Shown here: piece by piece, positions 12,762 through 23,425 of the stretch
How the letters are laid out: the number at the start of each line of letters is the position of its first letter
Numbering within the stretch: the first letter of the stretch is position 1
NCBI GenBank assembly: GCA_040285825.1
Contig: JAUPSS010000007.1
Location: 2,516,689 to 2,580,688 of the forward strand
DNA length: 64,000 bases
Direction of reading: 5' to 3'
DNA from: Eukaryota sp. TZLM1-RC
Taxonomy: Eukaryota > Protista > Metamonada: BaSk clade
Made by a program: the position numbers and the translations under genes
Notes under the pieces: generated by a model
The model's database searches: none
Told to the model about the DNA's origin: nothing
Seen by the model: the letters and a program-made list of their open reading frames with translations, nothing else

Positions 12762-13965
12762 ATATATGCCGGAATTAATGCCGTATTTTCAATCAACATA
12801 TTGCACATATTCTAATTTACATTTTGGTAATAACATTTTGAGTTCATCAAGTGGTGTAAAGCAAGGAGATCCGTTAGGACCTCTTTTGTTTTCTTTGGCC
12901 ATTCATCCTATTTTACTGCAAATTCAAGAGATGTTTCCTTCACTAAAAATGATTACATATATGGATGATGTTGTGCTTATTGGTGATTTAAATATTGTGA
13001 AACAAGCAACTGTATGTTTCAAAGAATTATTTACCAAAATTGGTCTCCGACTTAATTTACTTAAATGTGTTTTGTTATCGAATTCTCCAGTTTCCACAAT
13101 AGTTGATGGTATTGAAATTCAAGCCAAATTATATTCAATTGATGCTATTCGTCATTTGGGTTCGTTTTTAGGAAATAATGATGAAATTACCAAAAAATTG
13201 TTTGAAAAGTTGAACTCAATTTCCGACAAAATTGACCGAATGATGAATTTAGATATACAAAAACACATCAAATTTACCATTATAAGACTGTGTTTTAGTT
13301 CTAACTTCAATCATATATTTCGATCTACAAATCCTCTCGTCACTAGGTCTCTGGCTCAGAAGTTTAATGAGTTACGTGCAAAAGTTCTGTCACAATTACT
13401 GAGATGTAAAATTTTCCAAATTCCAGACCATGCTTATCTTAGTCAACATTATGGCGGTTTAGGTTGGACGAAGGCTTCTATTCTTACCTCGTGTGCATTT
13501 GTTGGTGGATGCAGAAATGCAATCTTTGAGTTTTCCGAAAGATTTGCAGATTGGGAAGATTTATTGATGACAACGCAAAGTTCCACTGTTTTTGCATTAA
13601 ATGAAGAAACTTCAAAAATTGATGCAGAAAAATGGGGTCGATGCTTTCCCCAATCATTCAATGGCAATATTCCAGAAAAGAATGTTTTAAATTTGAAGTA
13701 CACTCTTTGAACATTACAGAAACGATTGACTGGAATGTATGAAAATGATCTTTATAATAATATATGCAGCTCGTCTGTTTTAAAACAAGATCTTCACTCA
13801 TTGTTATTGGAAAAGGGTGTTTGTGAAAACAAGTCATCAGATTCTTCACTTTTTGTAACCATTGTACCACGAAGATTTGGGTTGTGTGCCACTAATGAAG
13901 CATTTGTAACAAAAATGAGATTATATTTGAATATCCCCATTAATCAATTATTATCAAAAGAAAAA
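12762..13965 (+). mobile_element. CRE-like non-LTR family A fragment
   Basis: ORFs 12664..13710 and 13726..14013 carry QGDPLGP, YMDD and GGLG. The fragment breaks at the zinc knuckle (KEKC). Confidence 0.92.
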
Positions 13966-14446
13966 TGCCCAGATATGCTTCAAAATACTGATGTGTGGGC
14001 TTTATTGCAATAGCTTCTCTTATATTATTGAATAATATTGGGAATTTAATAATTTTGGTGAATTGAATTCAGAAGGCTTCAGAAAGTTATCAAATCTCTT
14101 CATTGTTATTTTTTTAAACTCTATTTTTTATTTTTTTAATTGAATGTGGTGAAAATTGGGAAAGAAAGTTGAATCAGTAAAAAAATTGCTTATTTCTATC
14201 AGCATTAACCTCTTCAATTTCGTTAACAATTTTTTGTACTGTTTTGCTGTGAATTTGGAAAACTCATCGAACAAATATTTTAAGGGTGTACTCCTTCACA
14301 GTATTTCAGGGTGTCTTGAGCTAATCTTTTTATTTGTTTTATTTTATTTGTTTTATTTTATTTATTATTTCACTTTTTTTATTCGTATCTTGTATCCAAA
14401 TAGGATTACACTGTTGAATCAAATATCCATACTAGACTCTTCGACG

Positions 14447-16126
14447 ATGCCTCCACGTCTCAGTAAACTATTCATTGTCTGCATCAATCCTAATGTCTCC
14501 AATATCGACCTAATAAAGTCTTTCTTCTTGTCCCAAAATGCCATTCTACGTGAAGTACCAACAAGAGACTCACTAGTTGTTCAGTTCTGCTCGACCTTCC
14601 AATCTTTCACCAGTAACATTCTCACTCTTTCCAATACAGCCACTCTCCTCAACTCTTCTTTGATCACAGCCCTCCTCCGTACCACTCCTTCCAGCTCTCC
14701 TCATCTCTCTTCTCTTCTTGAACTCATCAGATCCCGTCAGTCAATCTACTCTCTTTCTCTCCTTCACCACAAGGTTCTTCTGTCAGGTACACTTCCCCAA
14801 GATGATCACCGCAACCTTACCAAACTTTTGCCTTACTTTGGATGTTCAATTGTGAATGATAGTCCTACTTTGGTGGTGGCAAAATATGTCACGTCATTAG
14901 ACTCGTTATTCAACTGTCCAATAGTCTCGAGTTTTTTACTAAGTTATGTTCAAAATGAACCTCCTTTTAGTTTTTTCCCAGAAGATATTCCAAGAGATGT
15001 CATTTTGTTACCCTTTTCTAATTTTGTAATTTGTGTAAAATATTTGGGTAATTCAGAATCTAAAAAAAGAATTGATTCCATTGTGACCCTCAATGGGGGT
15101 CAGGTTGTTGAAGTTGCTGATGCAACGGCAACTCACGTGATTTTTGATCCCCAACTTCCAATCAATAAATCAATTTTTGATGAGGTTTCCCTTTTAAATA
15201 TACCAGTAATGTCTGTTAATTGGATTTTTAATAGAATTAAATTGCCAATTCCCAATGATGATGATTATATTCTCAATTTAAACAGTTTGGTCGCAGAAAT
15301 TAATCAAAATGATTGCGAATATGATTGCCCTGACAGTCATAAATCTCCAGATTCTTTAAAATTATTTAATGGATTGAACTTTTTATTGCACGGGTTTAGT
15401 GAAAATTTAAACCTTAAAGATCAGTTATCCGAACTAATCAGTCAAAATGGGGGTCATTTAGTCAATCAAAATCCTCTTGCTGACGTCACCGTGTGTTGGC
15501 ATGGCCATCAAGTCCCGAAAGGTCTTCGGTTTAATTGTCTTATTGTTTCTCCAGAATGGATTACAATCAGCTTATGGTTGAATGAAAAAATTGATGTTAA
15601 TTCTTTTGCAATTCTGAAACCTTTAAATTTGAAATTAAGCCATTTGGGTAGTTTGTATTCAAATAATGAACTTTTTTCATATGTCATTTCGCTTCGAGGG
15701 CAACTTTATCAACAATGTTTAGAGGCAAGTTGTGAAATTTTGAAGATAACTCTTGCTGACAGATTAAGTTCTTTGAATCTAACAAGGTTAAAATTTGTGA
15801 TTTTCGACTATGATTCTTCTGTGAGCCCTATTATCAGTGACAAGATTAAACGTAAACTCAAGGTTTGCTTATCGAAAAATTTAAAATTTTTGTCGTCGCA
15901 GTTTATTTCAGATTCTCTTAATGGAAACTATTGTCAACTCGATAATTATTTCATTGCCCCTGAATCTATTTCTAGAACTCTATCAAATGAAGGTACTTCA
16001 AATGATAGCTCTTTATTAGCAACGATTCTTCAGCAAAACCAATCAAATGTTCAACCAAATGATTTCTATGATTTAGACAGTCAGATCCAACCTCCAGTTT
16101 GTCCTAGGGTGGGTTATAAATATTAA
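14447..16126 (+). CDS. Multi-BRCT-domain protein (TopBP1/Dpb11-like)
   Basis: BRCT patterns LNGGQV..ATHVI..IPVMSVNWI and LFNGLNF..QNGG..IVSPEWI. First ATG is at 14447; the upstream part of the listed ORF is AT-rich noise. Confidence 0.75.
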   Translation: MPPRLSKLFIVCINPNVSNIDLIKSFFLSQNAILREVPTRDSLVVQFCSTFQSFTSNILTLSNTATLLNSSLITALLRTTPSSSPHLSSLLELIRSRQSIYSLSLLHHKVLLSGTLPQDDHRNLTKLLPYFGCSIVNDSPTLVVAKYVTSLDSLFNCPIVSSFLLSYVQNEPPFSFFPEDIPRDVILLPFSNFVICVKYLGNSESKKRIDSIVTLNGGQVVEVADATATHVIFDPQLPINKSIFDEVSLLNIPVMSVNWIFNRIKLPIPNDDDYILNLNSLVAEINQNDCEYDCPDSHKSPDSLKLFNGLNFLLHGFSENLNLKDQLSELISQNGGHLVNQNPLADVTVCWHGHQVPKGLRFNCLIVSPEWITISLWLNEKIDVNSFAILKPLNLKLSHLGSLYSNNELFSYVISLRGQLYQQCLEASCEILKITLADRLSSLNLTRLKFVIFDYDSSVSPIISDKIKRKLKVCLSKNLKFLSSQFISDSLNGNYCQLDNYFIAPESISRTLSNEGTSNDSSLLATILQQNQSNVQPNDFYDLDSQIQPPVCPRVGYKY

Positions 16127-16493
16127 TATAAGGAAGAATTTATTAGAAAAAGATTTGAAAAAGCTGTTATTATTGATTTGTACAAATAGTCAATTGCTTA
16201 AATTTATTTGAGTTTTTCATTTCATGCACACAGCTTATTGTTACTCGCTGTCCTGAATTTGAGATTTGTTTTTTGCTTTTCAACGTAGCCTTAGTTGTAA
16301 TTTAGGTTTAAAAGTTGTTGTTTCAAATATTACCATTCTCCAACCAACTTTTAGACTCTATCTTTATTTCGATAATTTAATTAAATAGTTGTAGAAATTG
16401 CTTTTCCATTCCACTTTTTCATTAATAAAATGTATAAAATACAGTAGTTTATTCAACAAAAAATTCAAAATTAATTAAAAAATTAATATCTCC

Positions 16494-19400
16494 TTAAATA
16501 TTCCACTTTTTCTTTAAATTTTTCAACCTATTACTTACTGCAATCGCCTGCTGTCCAACTTCTGGCGCCACTACTTGACCATCATCTAATTCTGCCAAAT
16601 CCCGCATTGTCTTACTGAGTAATCCATCTCTCCACTCCCTAGTGGCTGGGTTGGTAAAGCCATAGAGTTCATTAGCAGGCTGAGTTTTGGGATTGATGTC
16701 AGGGGCCAGGACCTTATTGCCATAATATGCCTTCATTGAAGCAGCAAGTATTCTCCAAACGCAAGTTTTTCCTGAACCAGCTGGACCCAATACAAAAACA
16801 GAATGTCGTACTTCAAGCAACTCTTTAAGCTGGACCACCTTTAATACAAAGAGATCACAATCTGATTGTAATCCTGCTTCGATACAGCATTGGCGAACAA
16901 CATCTTCAAACTTAACGTCTACCTTTCGTGGTAGATCCAATCCCGGGAATAAATCGCCGATAAGACCCATGAAAACCTCAACATCTTCAGTAATAATCTT
17001 GGGCAAATTAAAATCTCTTAAAGCCCTCATCAAAATGTTATCCTCTACAACATCTGGTTCAGCTCTCTTGAGAGAACCAGCCACCACCAAGACAGACTTG
17101 ATGGCACGAAGGCCCCAATCGTAGTGATGTTGTTTGGATAAAAGTTCCTTACAAAGGGAATACAGGGTGGTAAATTTCAAAGCCAAAAGTTTGGCAGATT
17201 CAAAACCCTCAGCCATGAGCATGATTTCAGCAATGATTTGGAAATCTGGAACAACCATAGAAACAGGTCTGAATAGAGATTTTACGTTTTCAGGAAGTTC
17301 AGTCCTACCCGCATAACCGGGATTCATTGTAATAAACACACCAACAGTTGGTTTAAGCTTGACATACTCGTCAAGTAACCAAAATTCGGGTTTGGATCCC
17401 CTAACTGCGTCGAGAATGGACTTGACTTGACTTGCGACGACTGACAAGACTTCAATGGAAATTCTATTAAATTCATCAAAGCAACCCCAAGAACCAGAAG
17501 CTGATAGTCCTTTGAATATATTACCAAGAGATTTAAAATTCATCTGTTCAGAACAATTAAAAACGTAAACCATCAATCCTAGAGCCCGACCCAAATCTTT
17601 TGTGGTTTCAGTCTTACCAGTACCAGCTGGCCCAGCAGGAGCACCTCCCATAAACAGCCATAGTGATTGGGTTAGAGTAATGTAACAACGATCTGTGAGC
17701 GGAGTAATAACCAATCTAGGTGTATTTCCTAAATATTCATAACTGTAACGGAATTGAGCATCACAAATGTCCGCGAAACAATCAGAACGTTGATCATCCC
17801 ACTTCAGGCGAAGTTGCTTCTGCCATTGGAAGTTATCGGGTGAATCTACTTTTTGGTCAATTAAATCAGCAACAACGTCTCTGGAATGTACCTCAATTGT
17901 ACATAGAGTGCAAATTTTCAGACGTGTTTGTTTATCTAAATTACCTTGAATTAACTTGATTAATTCAGTAATTTGCTTCTGTTGCATCTTGTTATAGTCA
18001 ATCAAAGCATCTTCGGAACCCTCTACGAGCTTTTGGAAGGCATAATTCACATCAGAAGTCCACCAAATTTGAGAACCAACAAGGCAAATCTGCGCAGGAT
18101 ACTCAAAGATCCACTTAGACCTTCTAGAAGCATCATAAGTGTTGACTGCTTCGTTTAGAATTGATTTTAAATTGCTCTGCATAGCTTCAACTACCCTATT
18201 GAGCCAGTTTTCCACCTGTCCAGAGAGAATAACTGGTTGAGAAAACTTAACGTACTCTCCATCCTTTGCATGCATCCCAATAGCAATACAATCAGAATCA
18301 TCATCACTTTCCTGGAAGTCAAGCTTTGCAATTGAGTCGAATATCTTCCCCATGTGGTGCTGGACTTGTTTTGGTCTTGTTCCCTTTGACAAAATATCCA
18401 ATAAATCAGCAGGAGAAATGAAATAAAAACGTGGAAATGCTCTTCGTTTTGTATCCAAATATTCATCCAAACTTTTTTGACACCTGTCAAGCTCACTGGC
18501 CATGTTTTCCAAAAATTCAAGGAAACCATCTGAGCAGCAACAGTCAATAACTGCAGGATTACGTGACACTTCCATGATTCTTGATCCCCAAGAATCATCA
18601 ATCACGTCGAACCGTTTAGCATCATCAGGCAGTTGTTCGCGAATGTCTTGTGAAAATTTGAAAATTGATTGTAAATGAGTCCATGTCTTTTGAACATCTA
18701 GCCAAGTACTAATAACAGAGTCTGTTGTGCCTAATGCATTCATCCATTGTTTGACTTTGTCAACAAAATGAGCAACATGTCTGGAAGAGGACATATTTTG
18801 AACCAAAACCATATCATTTTCGAGCTGCTCAACGACTTCATCAGAAACGGAAACCATCAAATAACCTTCCCGGTCGGCGTGAGGGTTAAATTCAAATACC
18901 AGATTTCTCCAAGTTTGTTCCAGAGCGGAAAGAGTATTTTCTATTTGTTCTTCTTTTCTCGCTTTCAAAATAATTTCAGAGACATCATCTGAGAACTTGT
19001 GCAACTCCAACTCTAACATATCTTCAAGAGTAAAATCATCAGAGATTTCAAATGACTTCTGGGCAAGTCTTGCAATTTCCTTCCAATGACGTTTCCTCAT
19101 CGAATCGTTTCTAAGGTCCGCAATGAGGGGCACGGTATTGAGGAAGTTGGTGACCAAGTCAGAGAGTCCTGAATAAGCATCATATGCACGGACTTCCTTT
19201 TTCAAACCACGTAAATCTTTATTAAAATTCTTAGTGGCCATTTCCATAACATCGGTGTTAATGTTACGCCATGAAGTAGTTTTCCATTGGTTGAGAGAAG
19301 AAGTAACAAGTGAATTCACGTCCCAAATAGTCTTTAATAATCTTAATTCATTTCTCAAGGAAGAAAGCTTGGTCAGGTCTGAAGCAGAAATGTCAAACAA

Positions 19401-22400
19401 TCGTTGCTCTTCTTTCAGAGAATCAGCAAGTTCTTCAAAAGATTGTAGTTCGACCTCAAACTGGTCTAGTAATTTGTAAGAATCCAATGCGCCATTTTCT
19501 GAAAATTTAGTAACAGAAGATGACTTGAATTTTTGCTTGAGCTCTCTGAAAGAATCATCAAAATCAACCATTCTTTCTTTAACTTTTAATACTTCAAGTT
19601 GCTTAAAAGGCGCTACTTTCTCGGAAACAATAATGGATAATTTTTTTAATTCGGAAAAATCATTTTTTAATTGATCAATTTCTTCAGTACTAGACGAAAC
19701 TCTGTCTGAGAAACCATTATTCTTTAAAATTAACAAAATTTCTTTTAGTGAAGTGAAATCAGATTCAAATTTATCGCAAGATTCATCAATATCAAGAATC
19801 CACCGCATAATGCTGCTTAAATCTTCAGAGCTGACAGATCCTTCTAAATCAGTATTAAAAACAATATTAGCGTCACCAATAAATTTTCTAATATATGCCA
19901 CTTCAGAAACTAATTTTTCAGACAAATGGTCAACATAGACAGAACTCCAACGATTAACTAGCTGAATTAAACAATGCTTACCTTTAGTAATGTCAATGGA
20001 GAGCCAGAATAAATCATCAGGGACGGAAATTAAGGAAGGACACTTGGATTTACAACACAATTCGGTTGGTAATTGTTCCAATGAACTTGCCAATTTACTA
20101 AAGTTCTTTAGTTTATCTTCAAATAAATCCAAACTAGGAGCTTGGGGGGTATATTCAGGCTGGTCTAGCTCCGCGTCATTTCTATCGACATTACCATGGA
20201 CCAAGAACCACTCAAGATCATCTTCAGGAGAAACCTTCCACAACCAAGAGTACTTATCGAATGACGCTTTAACTTTGGTAAGAAAAGATGAAGCGGATGA
20301 AATTGTTGATAGAATTTGGGATTTGCCTTCTTCTAAAAGAGAAGAATTGGTAACTTCTGCTGAATAATTAGTATTAGAACCATCAGGTTTAATTAAGAAT
20401 TCTGCTGATTTGAATATATTTGAAATAATCAACTCAAACACACTGACCAATGAAATTGAATCACTTTCATCACCGGGGGAAAAACAAGGAATTCTGCTAT
20501 CCAAATCAATAAAAAACTCAGGAACAACTAAGGGTGCCTCAGTTACATTGGGGTTAAATTGGTCTAATAAATGATTAAAAGAGAGCTGAATAATTTCAAT
20601 CAAATGCTGACCGATTAGATTGGAAACATATTCAAGATAGATACTCCAGGCCTGGGGGTCGACTTGCTGAGAAAATTTATCATTTTCCTTTCCCTTGATT
20701 GTCGACAATGTATCAGTTAATAACTCTGAAATTGATTGTGTAGTGTTGGTAATTGAAGGGAAAACATTTGTAATTTTGCTAATTAAGGTTTCAATTTCTT
20801 TTTCTGAAGTGATCCTGAAAATTTTACCTTTCTTCCTTGATAACATTGGTTTTTGTTTCAATTGGTCCATAAAACTATTAATCTTATCTTCATTTGCTAA
20901 TAACTTAGATACCAAAGACTTAAAATTAAAAGTCCTCTCCACAATTGATTGAATACTCGAAGCTGCAGACTCTGAAATCCAAGTAACTTCGTTTGATAAC
21001 ACCCCAATTTCATCAGAAATAGACTCAATTATTGGTTTAAAGACCTCAACGTCACATTGTCTAACCAGTTCAATTCCTGAGTTATAATTTCTCACTGCAT
21101 CATTCAAAGAGACCACCCAATGGCGATATTTGGAACTTTCTTCAAAGACTTGGAGAGCCTCTTCGGGTATTGGGAGATTCATGTACTGAAAGTATTTGAT
21201 TTCTCGTAATAATGCCACTAATTTTGGATCAAAATTGACAACCGTAAAACCAAAACCAAACTGTGAAACTTCTCCAAGGGGCTTTAGCAAGGGTGATTTG
21301 AGATTCAAAACAGCTTCTTTAGCAGCATTGTCAGCCCAGTCTTTGTAAACTTGGTTCTCGTGGTTGCTGATTAATTCAAGAAACTCATTGGCCCTTTTCA
21401 CCACTCTCCTTGCCTTAGAGTGACTTAAAATAGATGTGGAAACTTCTTGCTCTGAGGACCTTCTGCTGCCATCCTGGTTCCATTGTTTGAGCAGAGAGAG
21501 TGGTTCTTCGCATCTCTTCTTGAGCATCTTGGTCCAAAATAATTGTCCTGCAAAGGGAGGCATATTGTTATCTAATGGAGGATTGGCTTTGTTGTATGAG
21601 AAATGCGAATGAAGAGATTCAATTTCTTCTTCAAATAGTTCAAGGGCCTTTAAAAGCCTTGGAATGATAATATCCTTAATTTCAGGGCGACCTACTAAGC
21701 ATTTAAAGGTTTCAAAAACAGTCAAACCAGCAGTAATAGTGGTAGAAGAATCAAAAGTTTGGCTTATCAGTTTAGCCAATTCTAAAGTCCAATTCCCGGT
21801 GATCCTGGAAAATTCAGATAATTGAGCAGTGAAAGAATCATTAACACGAAAATCACAGGATAAAGGGTTGTACTGGTGATTGACGAAAATTTCAAGTATT
21901 GACAAGAGAGGATCAACTCCAGATCGTTGCCATTCACTGAGGAGTTGAGTGAATTCTTCAAAGATCTGCTTGACTCTTGTTGACCCTTCTGTTCCATTTT
22001 GAACTATTGCACCAACTTCAACTTTCTCCAACCTAGAGAACTGGGAAACTATAGTAATATAAGATTCAAGAGAGACGATTCTAGACCTAGCTTCTGATAA
22101 AGGGAGGGTAATAGATGAGGAGAAAGTCCAAGGTTCTAAATATGAATCAGTATTGATACTTTCCTTATCCAAAACACGTTCCCGAAGCAAATCTTTTTCT
22201 GCCAAAATTCTGTCTCCCAATATTTTCAAATAAAGTTTACAGTCTTGAAGAATCTTCAAGACTTCAGCAGAATCATTATTGAAAACATTACCCCCTTCAC
22301 AACCAGCTAAACTAGAAACTGCATAAATTAACCCAAACTGGATTCTTCCAAACAAACGAACTAATAAAACAACTGGCATTGAGAATTTGGAGGGAGAATT

Positions 22401-23425
22401 GGGGTTTTCGGCCTTCACTTTGCCAAAAGCAATACATAATTCCTCCCAGAATAGCCTCAATAATCTTGGAAATTTAACACAAAGACTAATGAGTTCCTCC
22501 TTAGATAAATCAGAAAAACTTTCAATCTTCTCAAAATATTGTCGCAGAGGTGACAGGGCAGTGACAAGTATTGAGCTCTTTTTGATTGCCATATCGACAT
22601 CATCAAGAAGTAGGGAGAAATATGACGTGTATTTTGAGCTATGTGACCCTAAGACGTCAGCCATCATTTTTGATTCTTCTGATTGTAATTGTGATTGGAT
22701 AAACTTCAAGTCATCAACAAGTGACACCCAATAATCAACTTCCTGTGTAAGACCAAAATTCGAAAAGTCTTCAAAAGTCTGATTAAAACCTTCCCCGTAC
22801 ACCAAGGCCACTTTTGCAGAAATAATCTTTCTCCATTGACCAACAGTTTCTTCTAGACGTTGTAGTTGACCTTGGTTAGATAGGTCTAGCTCTAGGGTTT
22901 CCATGGAAGGAATAAGTGAGGGGAGAAGGGTTTTTCCATTCACGGCGGAGAGGGCAGAGGAAGTAGAGGTAAGGAGACGATCAAAGTGAAGTTTGAGATC
23001 AGAGAGAACGACCTGTGGCCATGGAGATGAAGAATTATCAAACAGTGCAGGTTGTAGGAGAGAGGAGATTAGTGTGTTGAGGTGAGAGACGGGAGATTTG
23101 AGGGAGATGTCAAAGAAGGAGGCAGTGTTTTTGCTGCGGATGACAACAGTTCCTTTAGCAGATGGGTTGAAAAGAGGAGATGTTAAGGGGGGCTTGGTGC
23201 ATTGAAGTTCCCCAGAGGTATTTGTATAAAAAAGAAGAGAATCAGAAGGTGTAGTGGATGAGAGCAGGGCTGTTATAAGCTTCCTGGGATGAGTTGTAAC
23301 ATGTAATTTGCATACTGATTTGATGCATCTGTATAAAAGGTCGCCCAGGTGGATTCACGGAGGTTGAGTAGGTCAAGTACAGTACTACTGAGATCTGATA
23401 TGATACTTGGATCAACCTCGGTCAT
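16494..23425 (-). CDS. Axonemal outer-arm dynein beta-type heavy chain, N-terminal half only: join(23425..23316, 23283..16494), ~2,299 aa
   Basis: Tail and linker, AAA1 (EYLGNTPRLVITPLTDRCY, GPAGTGKTET, CFDEFNR) and AAA2 Walker A GPAGSGKT, then a stop. A 32-nt GTATG..ACTCATcccAG intron at 23284-23315 joins ATG 23425 in frame. Confidence 0.92.

What the first reader, a model, noticed from the sequence alone, without database searches (positions are those of the whole stretch)
16400..23425. Outer-arm dynein beta gene cleanly split inside AAA2: candidate trans-spliced or two-polypeptide dynein
Seen: a complete 5' end (ATG plus a 32-nt intron) and ~2,299 undamaged codons, ending just after AAA2 Walker A at ...AIA|VSNRLKNLKKKWNI*GDIN, where KWIVLDGDID (Walker B) is expected. 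A phase-0 donor-like CA|GTAAGT lies at 16538. No AG up to the region just past the stop restores a long frame. A GAATAAA like the one after MCM5 follows about 40 nt after the stop. No transposon sits at the break, and the convergent BRCT gene ends 370 bp away, so AAA3-6 and the stalk are not in cis. Known: full-length heavy chains are roughly twice this size, and in Giardia the outer-arm beta dynein is fragmented and assembled partly by spliceosomal split-intron trans-splicing. Inference: this is an independent or ancestral split-intron / split-protein system in another lineage.
Basis: partly seen in the sequence, partly recalled or inferred. Interest (0 to 1): 0.88.

Follow-up and report, generated by a model that had tools for sequence, protein, structure and literature searches.

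The report
Outer-arm dynein encoded as two genes
In the free-living flagellate Skoliomonas litria the giant outer-arm dynein motor protein is encoded by two separate genes cut in the middle of its second ATP-binding module. The cut is conserved in three species, and the two halves are most likely made as separate proteins that reassemble rather than being joined by RNA trans-splicing.

Summary
Window 23425-16494 (minus strand) is an intact 2299-codon gene with one 32-nt intron. It encodes the dynein tail, linker, AAA1 and the first half of AAA2, and it stops between the Walker A and Walker B motifs of AAA2.

The window comes from Skoliomonas litria TZLM1-RC, a metamonad. The missing half exists as a second gene, co-oriented and 165 kb away on the same contig. 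That gene has its own ATG and a ~96-residue helical leader, then resumes exactly at Walker B. The scan had already noted it (s1-644021).

Two sister species have the same break. Their N-halves end at the same codon, with a conserved ~27-residue basic, heptad-patterned tail. In one of them the two halves lie on different contigs. Synonymous sites between the species are saturated, yet the tail and leader keep their reading frames.

The GTAAGT at 16538 does not match the lineage's intron consensus (GTATGY ... CTYAYnnnAG). It is not conserved in position, and no intron-half complementarity was found.

I conclude this is a conserved two-polypeptide dynein, not a trans-spliced one. It is a new member of the known class of split dynein heavy chains (Ustilago, Agaricomycetes, Wallemia, Giardia DHC4).

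The parts
23316..23425 (-). Exon 1 of the dynein N-half gene (ATG at 23425; 36 codons plus 2 nt)
   Evidence: Translation equals residues 1-36 of NCBI protein P0287
23284..23315 (-). 32-nt spliceosomal intron, GTATGC ... CTCATCCCAG
   Evidence: Sequence. It has the same architecture as four other introns of the two dynein halves in two species
16497..23283 (-). Exon 2: tail, linker, AAA1 and the N-terminal half of AAA2, plus the lineage-specific tail
   Evidence: ORF; Pfam domains; equals residues 38-2299 of P0287
17610..17633 (-). AAA1 Walker A (P0287 residues 1921-1928), intact
   Evidence: Motif scan; the AAA1 Walker B region is seen
16764..16787 (-). AAA2 Walker A (P0287 residues 2203-2210), the last conserved nucleotide-binding motif in this gene
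16497..16577 (-). 27-codon C-terminal tail with no counterpart in unsplit dyneins: a basic amphipathic helix with a conserved heptad pattern
   Evidence: Alignment A1; DNA comparison; pN below pS; AF2 helix; heptad test; charge
16533..16538 (-). GTAAGT, the donor-like hexamer. It lies inside the conserved tail codons and is judged a chance match
   Evidence: It occurs once in the 6.9-kb gene, about the number I would expect by chance (my estimate, not computed). All 5 real introns start GTATG. It is displaced by 7 nt and in another phase in GEM-RC1, and reads GTAAAT in TZLM3-RCL
16494..16496 (-). TAA stop, at the same codon position in all three species
16448..16453 (-). AATAAA, a candidate polyadenylation signal 40 nt after the stop
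   Evidence: function not tested
16127..16493 (.). 367-nt non-coding spacer to the convergent BRCT gene, with no dynein relic
   Evidence: Three-frame translation; tblastn with C-half proteins finds nothing
14156..16126 (+). Convergent BRCT-domain gene (NCBI model 559 aa), which rules out continuation of the dynein gene in cis

Best explanation
This is the N-terminal gene of a dynein heavy chain (outer-arm beta, DNAH9/11/17 type) that is stably split into two genes in the genus Skoliomonas. Each gene has its own start and stop codon. I infer that each is transcribed and translated separately. The N-half (2299 aa) carries the tail, linker, AAA1 and the Walker A part of AAA2, and ends in a ~27-residue basic amphipathic helix. 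The C-half (2373 aa, 165 kb away) begins with a ~96-residue acidic leader of three helices and then continues at the AAA2 Walker B strand through AAA3-6, the stalk and the C-terminal domain. I infer that the two polypeptides co-assemble, rebuilding the AAA2 fold across the chain break. I also infer that the tail helix and the leader helices act as the docking module. Shown here: the split, its exact complementarity, its conservation, and the protein-level conservation of both extensions. Inferred only: separate translation, physical association, and the role of the helices.
For: The N-half gene is intact and is annotated as 2299 aa by an RNA-seq-guided pipeline. The C-half, P0163, lies on the same contig. 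It has an ATG, a leader, then Walker B and every later dynein domain. The two halves tile a full heavy chain without gap or overlap against Barthelona, Willaertia and fish dyneins. The N-halves of TZLM3-RCL and GEM-RC1 end at the same codon. In TZLM3-RCL the halves lie on contigs 5 and 3. Synonymous sites are saturated (pS 0.66-0.95), but the tail has pN 0.35-0.45 and the leader pN 0.45, with an in-frame indel and a fixed stop position. The heptad pattern of the tail is identical in the three species, reached by 4-48 of 5000 shuffles. The tail has net charge +4 to +5 and the leader -4 to -6. AF2 predicts one helix for the tail and three for the leader, and gives low confidence to each half of AAA2 folded alone. 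The catalytic motifs are intact. The organism swims with both flagella. No full-length close paralogue appeared among the best 150 hits of an exhaustive search.
Against: Association of the halves and the role of the helices are untested. The leader is known from only two species, since the C-half of GEM-RC1 was not recovered. In both species with data, a donor-like site in the tail and an AG in the leader happen to be phase-compatible, so a non-consensus trans-splice is not strictly excluded.
Confidence: 0.85

Rival explanations
1. Giardia-style split-intron trans-splicing. The N-half transcript would be cut at the GTAAGT at 16538 and joined to an acceptor in the C-half transcript, giving one mRNA and one polypeptide.
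For: A GT-containing hexamer lies in the tail codons of all three species. The organism is a metamonad with Giardia-like intron signals. Giardia trans-splices dynein genes. Candidate AG sites in the leader would be in frame in both species.
Against: All five cis introns examined start GTATG and end CTYAYnnnAG, and the candidate sites fit neither motif. The hexamer shifts by 7 nt and changes phase between species. Residues after it, and the whole leader, are conserved as protein while synonymous sites are saturated. The stop codon position is fixed. Complementarity between the N-half 3' region and the C-half 5' region was weak: 6 of 200 (TZLM1-RC) and 2 of 200 (TZLM3-RCL) mononucleotide shuffles scored as high, and the TZLM1-RC best match lies 1.4 kb from the gene.
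Confidence: 0.06
2. The two genes encode proteins that no longer work together: a motor-less tail-plus-AAA1 protein and a separate AAA2-6 protein, or one of them is on the way to loss.
For: There is no direct evidence of association. Scan notes (unverified) list several truncated or motor-dead dynein genes in this genome.
Against: Both halves are under strong purifying selection in their conserved cores (pN 0.10-0.16). All motifs are intact. The halves are exactly complementary. Neither half contains a complete AAA2 fold. No other close beta-type heavy chain was seen.
Confidence: 0.06
3. Assembly error or recent pseudogenisation at about 16.5 kb.
For: None was found beyond the truncation itself.
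Against: Three independently assembled genomes show the same end point, the same tail and the same stop, each with different downstream neighbours. The C-half starts at the complementary position in two genomes.
Confidence: 0.02

Closest known systems
Ustilago maydis Dyn1/Dyn2 and other basidiomycete split cytoplasmic dynein genes (Straube 2001, as cited in Kollmar 2016, PMC5100056; Schizophyllum commune, PMC4540427)
   Same: A dynein heavy chain is encoded by two unlinked genes that are translated separately and assembled. Some of these cuts also fall inside an AAA module (AAA4 in Ustilaginomycotina, AAA1 in Wallemia).
   Different: Those are cytoplasmic DHC1 genes in fungi, cut at other positions. 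Here the gene is an axonemal outer-arm beta chain in a metamonad, cut between Walker A and Walker B of AAA2, and both new ends carry conserved helical extensions.
Giardia lamblia and Spironucleus salmonicida outer-arm DHC4 (Roy 2012, as summarised in PMC5100056)
   Same: It is an outer-arm dynein of a metamonad whose N-terminal part is translated independently of the rest and combined at the protein level. The intron signals are also similar (GTATGY, with the branch motif fused to the 3' splice site; the Giardia motifs are from my own knowledge).
   Different: In Giardia the C-terminal part is itself built from three trans-spliced pieces, whereas here it is one gene with one small cis intron. 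I could not obtain the position of the Giardia protein-level break, so homology of the break is untested. Barthelona, which is closer to Skoliomonas, has a continuous transcript, which favours an independent origin.
Giardia splintrons (Hsp90, DHC beta and gamma, p68 helicase)
   Same: The coding halves of a conserved gene lie at distant loci.
   Different: Splintrons have consensus splice signals and long complementarity between the intron halves. Neither is present here.

Membership tests
Axonemal outer-arm dynein beta heavy chain (DNAH9/11/17, DHC4 type) | DHC_N1, DHC_N2 and six AAA modules with stalk and C-terminal domain; best matches are beta-type outer-arm chains | tested here: met
   The N-half has DHC_N1, DHC_N2, AAA1 and half of AAA2. 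The C-half has the AAA2 lid, AAA3, AAA4, MT stalk, AAA5, AAA6 and Dynein_C. The named best hits are DNAH9/11/17 and ciliary beta chains. The feature is met only by the two genes taken together.
Split dynein heavy chain made as two polypeptides | Two separate genes, each with its own start and stop, not joinable in cis | tested here: met
   The N-half has a stop and a convergent neighbour. The C-half has an ATG. The genes are 165 kb apart, or on different contigs in TZLM3-RCL.
Split dynein heavy chain made as two polypeptides | The halves are complementary and both are kept under selection in related species | tested here: met
   Alignments A1 and A2; pN/pS
Split dynein heavy chain made as two polypeptides | Separate mRNAs and physical association of the two proteins | not testable with these tools
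Spliceosomal split-intron (splintron) trans-splicing | The exon ends at a consensus 5' splice site and the partner starts after a consensus branch/3' site | tested here: not met
   The consensus from 5 introns is GTATGY ... CTYAYnnnAG. The candidate sites are GTAAGT or GTAAAT, are not conserved in position, and have no matching acceptor motif.
Spliceosomal split-intron (splintron) trans-splicing | Extended base pairing between the two intron halves | tested here: not met
   The best complementary stretch is an imperfect 33-nt AT-rich match, reached by 6 of 200 shuffles and lying 1.4 kb upstream of the C-half ATG.
Spliceosomal split-intron (splintron) trans-splicing | Chimeric mature transcripts | not tested
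   No reads were laid.
Split intein (protein trans-splicing) | HINT fold, with a nucleophile at the start of the N-fragment and a terminal His-Asn plus nucleophile at the C-junction | tested here: not met
   Pfam gives no HINT or intein hit. Both extensions are predicted all-helical. The junction residues do not fit.

The most novel reading that the evidence does not exclude
The tail helix of the N-half and the three leader helices of the C-half form a dedicated four-helix docking module. This module evolved to hold together a P-loop domain whose beta-sheet is shared between two polypeptides, making it a natural zipper-assisted split AAA+ module. It could also allow regulated or late assembly of the motor, for example joining the two halves only in the cytoplasmic pre-assembly step.
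Probability: 0.35. Interest if true: 0.65.

Novelty: new member of a known kind. Interest (0 to 1): 0.52.

Why it matters
Dynein heavy chains are among the largest single polypeptides, and it is usually assumed that the motor ring must be a single chain. A break between Walker A and Walker B of AAA2, kept in three long-diverged species that still swim, shows that the ring tolerates a chain break inside a nucleotide-binding fold. It points to a natural site and natural helical add-ons for engineering split dyneins. It also adds a free-living relative to the Giardia and Spironucleus cases. That makes it possible to ask whether gene fragmentation of outer-arm dyneins arose repeatedly in metamonads, and whether protein-level splitting precedes, follows or is unrelated to intron fragmentation.

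Tried and rejected
1. Homology between the N-half tail and the end of the C-half leader, which would be a footprint of partial duplication. Local alignments were no better than shuffles.

2. Relics of N-half coding sequence upstream of the C-half, or of C-half sequence downstream of the N-half. tblastn found nothing.

3. Intron-half complementarity. It was not above background.

4. Split intein. Rejected.

5. A leader-only database search returned only the query itself. This tool needs shared 5-residue words, so the blank says little.

6. A second, paralogous half-dynein in GEM-RC1 (P0072) turned out to be three adjacent gene calls separated by 108 and 72 nt. That is probably fragmented annotation and not a distant split.

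7. I could not get the position of the Giardia DHC4 protein-level break. Roy 2012 and Kamikawa 2011 are not held, Kollmar's supplements are not held, and no Giardia sequence reached the listed hits.

I did not resend those letters or any part of them.

9. One lookup of a neighbouring ORF found no record.

10. The joined two-exon protein was never built or searched. Exon 2 was used by reference, and the database's own protein P0287 was compared exon by exon.

Full report
**What is in the window**

On the minus strand, an ATG at 23425 opens a 110-nt exon. A 32-nt intron follows at 23315-23284. A single open frame then runs to a TAA at 16496-16494. Compared exon by exon, the product equals the NCBI protein P0287, 2299 aa, locus tag P9112_011502. 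I did not build or search the joined sequence.

Pfam finds DHC_N1, DHC_N2 and a complete AAA_6 (AAA1). Of AAA_5, the AAA2 module, it finds only positions 2-68 of 139. The Walker A motifs of AAA1 and AAA2 are intact.

Homology to other dyneins stops about 27 residues before the stop codon, between Walker A and Walker B of AAA2. The 367 nt down to the convergent BRCT gene contain no coding potential and no dynein relic.

**Source organism**

The contig is JAUPSS010000007.1 of GCA_040285825.1, labelled Eukaryota sp. TZLM1-RC. This is the type strain of Skoliomonas litria, a free-living haloalkaliphilic metamonad that swims with two flagella. Together with the barthelonids it is sister to Fornicata, the group that contains Giardia. 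Neither the genome paper nor the species description mentions dynein.

**The other half**

I searched with the C-terminal part of the Barthelona orthologue. This returned P0163, 2373 aa, locus tag P9112_011434, on the same contig. It lies on the same strand, and its ATG is 165,260 nt downstream of the N-half stop. This is the place an earlier scan note had flagged (s1-644021).

P0163 starts with about 96 residues that match nothing. It then aligns from the invariant Walker B strand of AAA2 onward. It carries the AAA2 lid, AAA3, AAA4, the stalk, AAA5, AAA6 and the C-terminal domain. The two proteins tile a complete heavy chain with no gap and no overlap.

A cis intron of 165 kb spanning dozens of genes, with a convergent gene directly downstream of the N-half, is not credible in a genome whose introns measure 32-35 nt.

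**Conservation**

An exhaustive profile-free search put two proteins on top of the list:
- P0002 is from TZLM3-RCL, with 73% identity.
- P0001 is from GEM-RC1, with 78% identity.

Both end at the same residue as the window's gene. The remaining listed hits that reach this part of the query aligned only to about query position 1162-1175 of 1200, short of the tail; the hits whose ends I read run on through Walker B or end earlier as fragments.

The downstream neighbours differ in the three genomes. In TZLM3-RCL the C-half (P0164) sits on a different contig from the N-half. These facts exclude misassembly and recent decay.

The closest outgroup, Barthelona sp. PAP020, has a transcript that runs through the junction with the canonical sequence and no insertion. 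The split therefore probably arose in the skoliomonad lineage. A trans-spliced Barthelona mRNA cannot be ruled out from a transcript alone.

**Trans-splicing or two polypeptides**

Five cis introns in the two halves of two species share a strict design: GTATGY at the 5' end, a CTYAY motif three bases before the terminal AG, and a length of 32-35 nt.

The GTAAGT at 16538 departs from this design. It is the only such hexamer in 6.9 kb, about the number I would expect by chance; this expectation is my own estimate and was not computed. In GEM-RC1 the same hexamer lies 7 nt further on and in another phase. In TZLM3-RCL it reads GTAAAT.

The residues encoded after the hexamer are conserved, and the stop codon is at the same position in all three species.

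Between species the synonymous sites are saturated (pS 0.66-0.95). The comparison by region is:

| Region | pN | Other features |
|---|---|---|
| N-half tail | 0.35-0.45 | stop codon fixed in position |
| C-half leader | 0.45 | 37% identity; in-frame 3-codon indel |
| Neighbouring conserved core | 0.10-0.16 | |

Neutral intron-like sequence would not have kept these reading frames.

Complementarity between the N-half 3' region and the C-half 5' region is weak: 6 of 200 (TZLM1-RC) and 2 of 200 (TZLM3-RCL) mononucleotide shuffles scored as high, and the TZLM1-RC best match lies 1.4 kb from the gene.

One residual point favours the rival reading. In both species with data, an AG in the leader would be phase-compatible with the donor-like site. 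However, neither AG has the acceptor motif.

I put trans-splicing at about 6%.

**How it probably works**

The break falls between Walker A and Walker B. Walker A and the strands and helices around it are on the N-half. Walker B and the rest of the fold are on the C-half.

From general knowledge of the AAA+ fold, the strands of the two chains must interleave in one sheet. Neither half can therefore form AAA2 alone. AlphaFold2 agrees with this: it gives low confidence to each half-domain folded on its own.

Both new ends carry lineage-specific extensions:
- **Tail:** it is predicted to be one helix. It has net charge +4 to +5. Its 4-3-4-3-4 hydrophobic pattern is identical in the three species and is matched by only 4-48 of 5000 shuffles.
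- **Leader:** it is predicted as three helices with pLDDT 60-85. It has net charge -4 to -6. Several of its helices show heptad patterns.

I infer that these helices dock onto each other and bring the halves together. AAA2 would then be completed and perhaps locked by bound nucleotide. This step is inference only. The tools take single natural chains, so I could not model the complex.

**Comparison with known cases**

Separately translated dynein halves are established in several lineages:
- Ustilago maydis has a cut in AAA4.
- Agaricomycetes have a cut before the motor domain.
- Wallemia has a cut in AAA1.
- In Giardia DHC4, the N-terminal part is translated separately from the rest.

The present case belongs to that class. 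It differs in lineage, in the dynein family (compared with the fungi), in the cut site, and in the conserved helical extensions. Whether the Giardia and Spironucleus break is at the same residue remains untested, because the source papers and sequences were out of reach.

**Other split dyneins in this genome**

Scan notes list further split or truncated dynein genes here. I could not verify them. The one paralogue I reached (P0072, GEM-RC1) is three adjacent gene calls and looks like fragmented annotation.

**Verdict**

This is a real feature, conserved across three species, and apparently undescribed: none of my paper searches turned up a report of it, and neither Skoliomonas paper mentions dynein. 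It is best read as a two-gene, two-polypeptide outer-arm beta dynein. It is a new member of a known kind, with an interesting and testable docking hypothesis.

Noticed in passing
window 23284-23315; L004 6317-6348; L005 6320-6354; L002 10120-10151 and 16270-16304: Skoliomonas introns look Giardia-like. They are 32-35 nt long, start GTATGY, and have a CTYAY motif three bases before the terminal AG. All five introns examined fit this pattern.
   Followed up: partly
L004 6317-6348 versus L005 6320-6354: The single intron of the C-half gene lies 12 nt (4 codons) further 3' in TZLM3-RCL than in S. litria, in the same phase and just after the Walker B strand. This could be intron sliding, or loss and regain. 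The intron is only 9-13 codons from the split point.
   Followed up: partly
window 16500-16512 and 16408-16420: An exact 13-nt direct repeat. One copy lies in the last codons of the tail and the other 92 nt further on in the 3' untranslated region. Its meaning is unknown.
   Followed up: no
L003 about 13583-13612: In GEM-RC1 the stop codon of the N-half lies in a 15-nt unit that is repeated in tandem directly downstream.
   Followed up: no
L006 10001-23585: An inner-arm-type dynein of GEM-RC1 is annotated as three consecutive co-oriented genes (2102, 1433 and 882 aa) separated by only 108 and 72 nt. These are probably missed introns or sequence errors, but a true adjacent split is not excluded.
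   Followed up: partly
L003 7184-13594: The GEM-RC1 orthologue of the N-half is annotated as three consecutive genes (427, 432 and 1197 aa), which suggests fragmented gene calls in that assembly.
   Followed up: no
L004 4023-4295 versus L005 5649-5920: A 275-nt block upstream of the C-half gene is 67% identical between the two species, even though synonymous sites are saturated. In S. litria it lies about 1.7 kb further from the ATG. It could be an unannotated small gene or a regulatory block.
   Followed up: no
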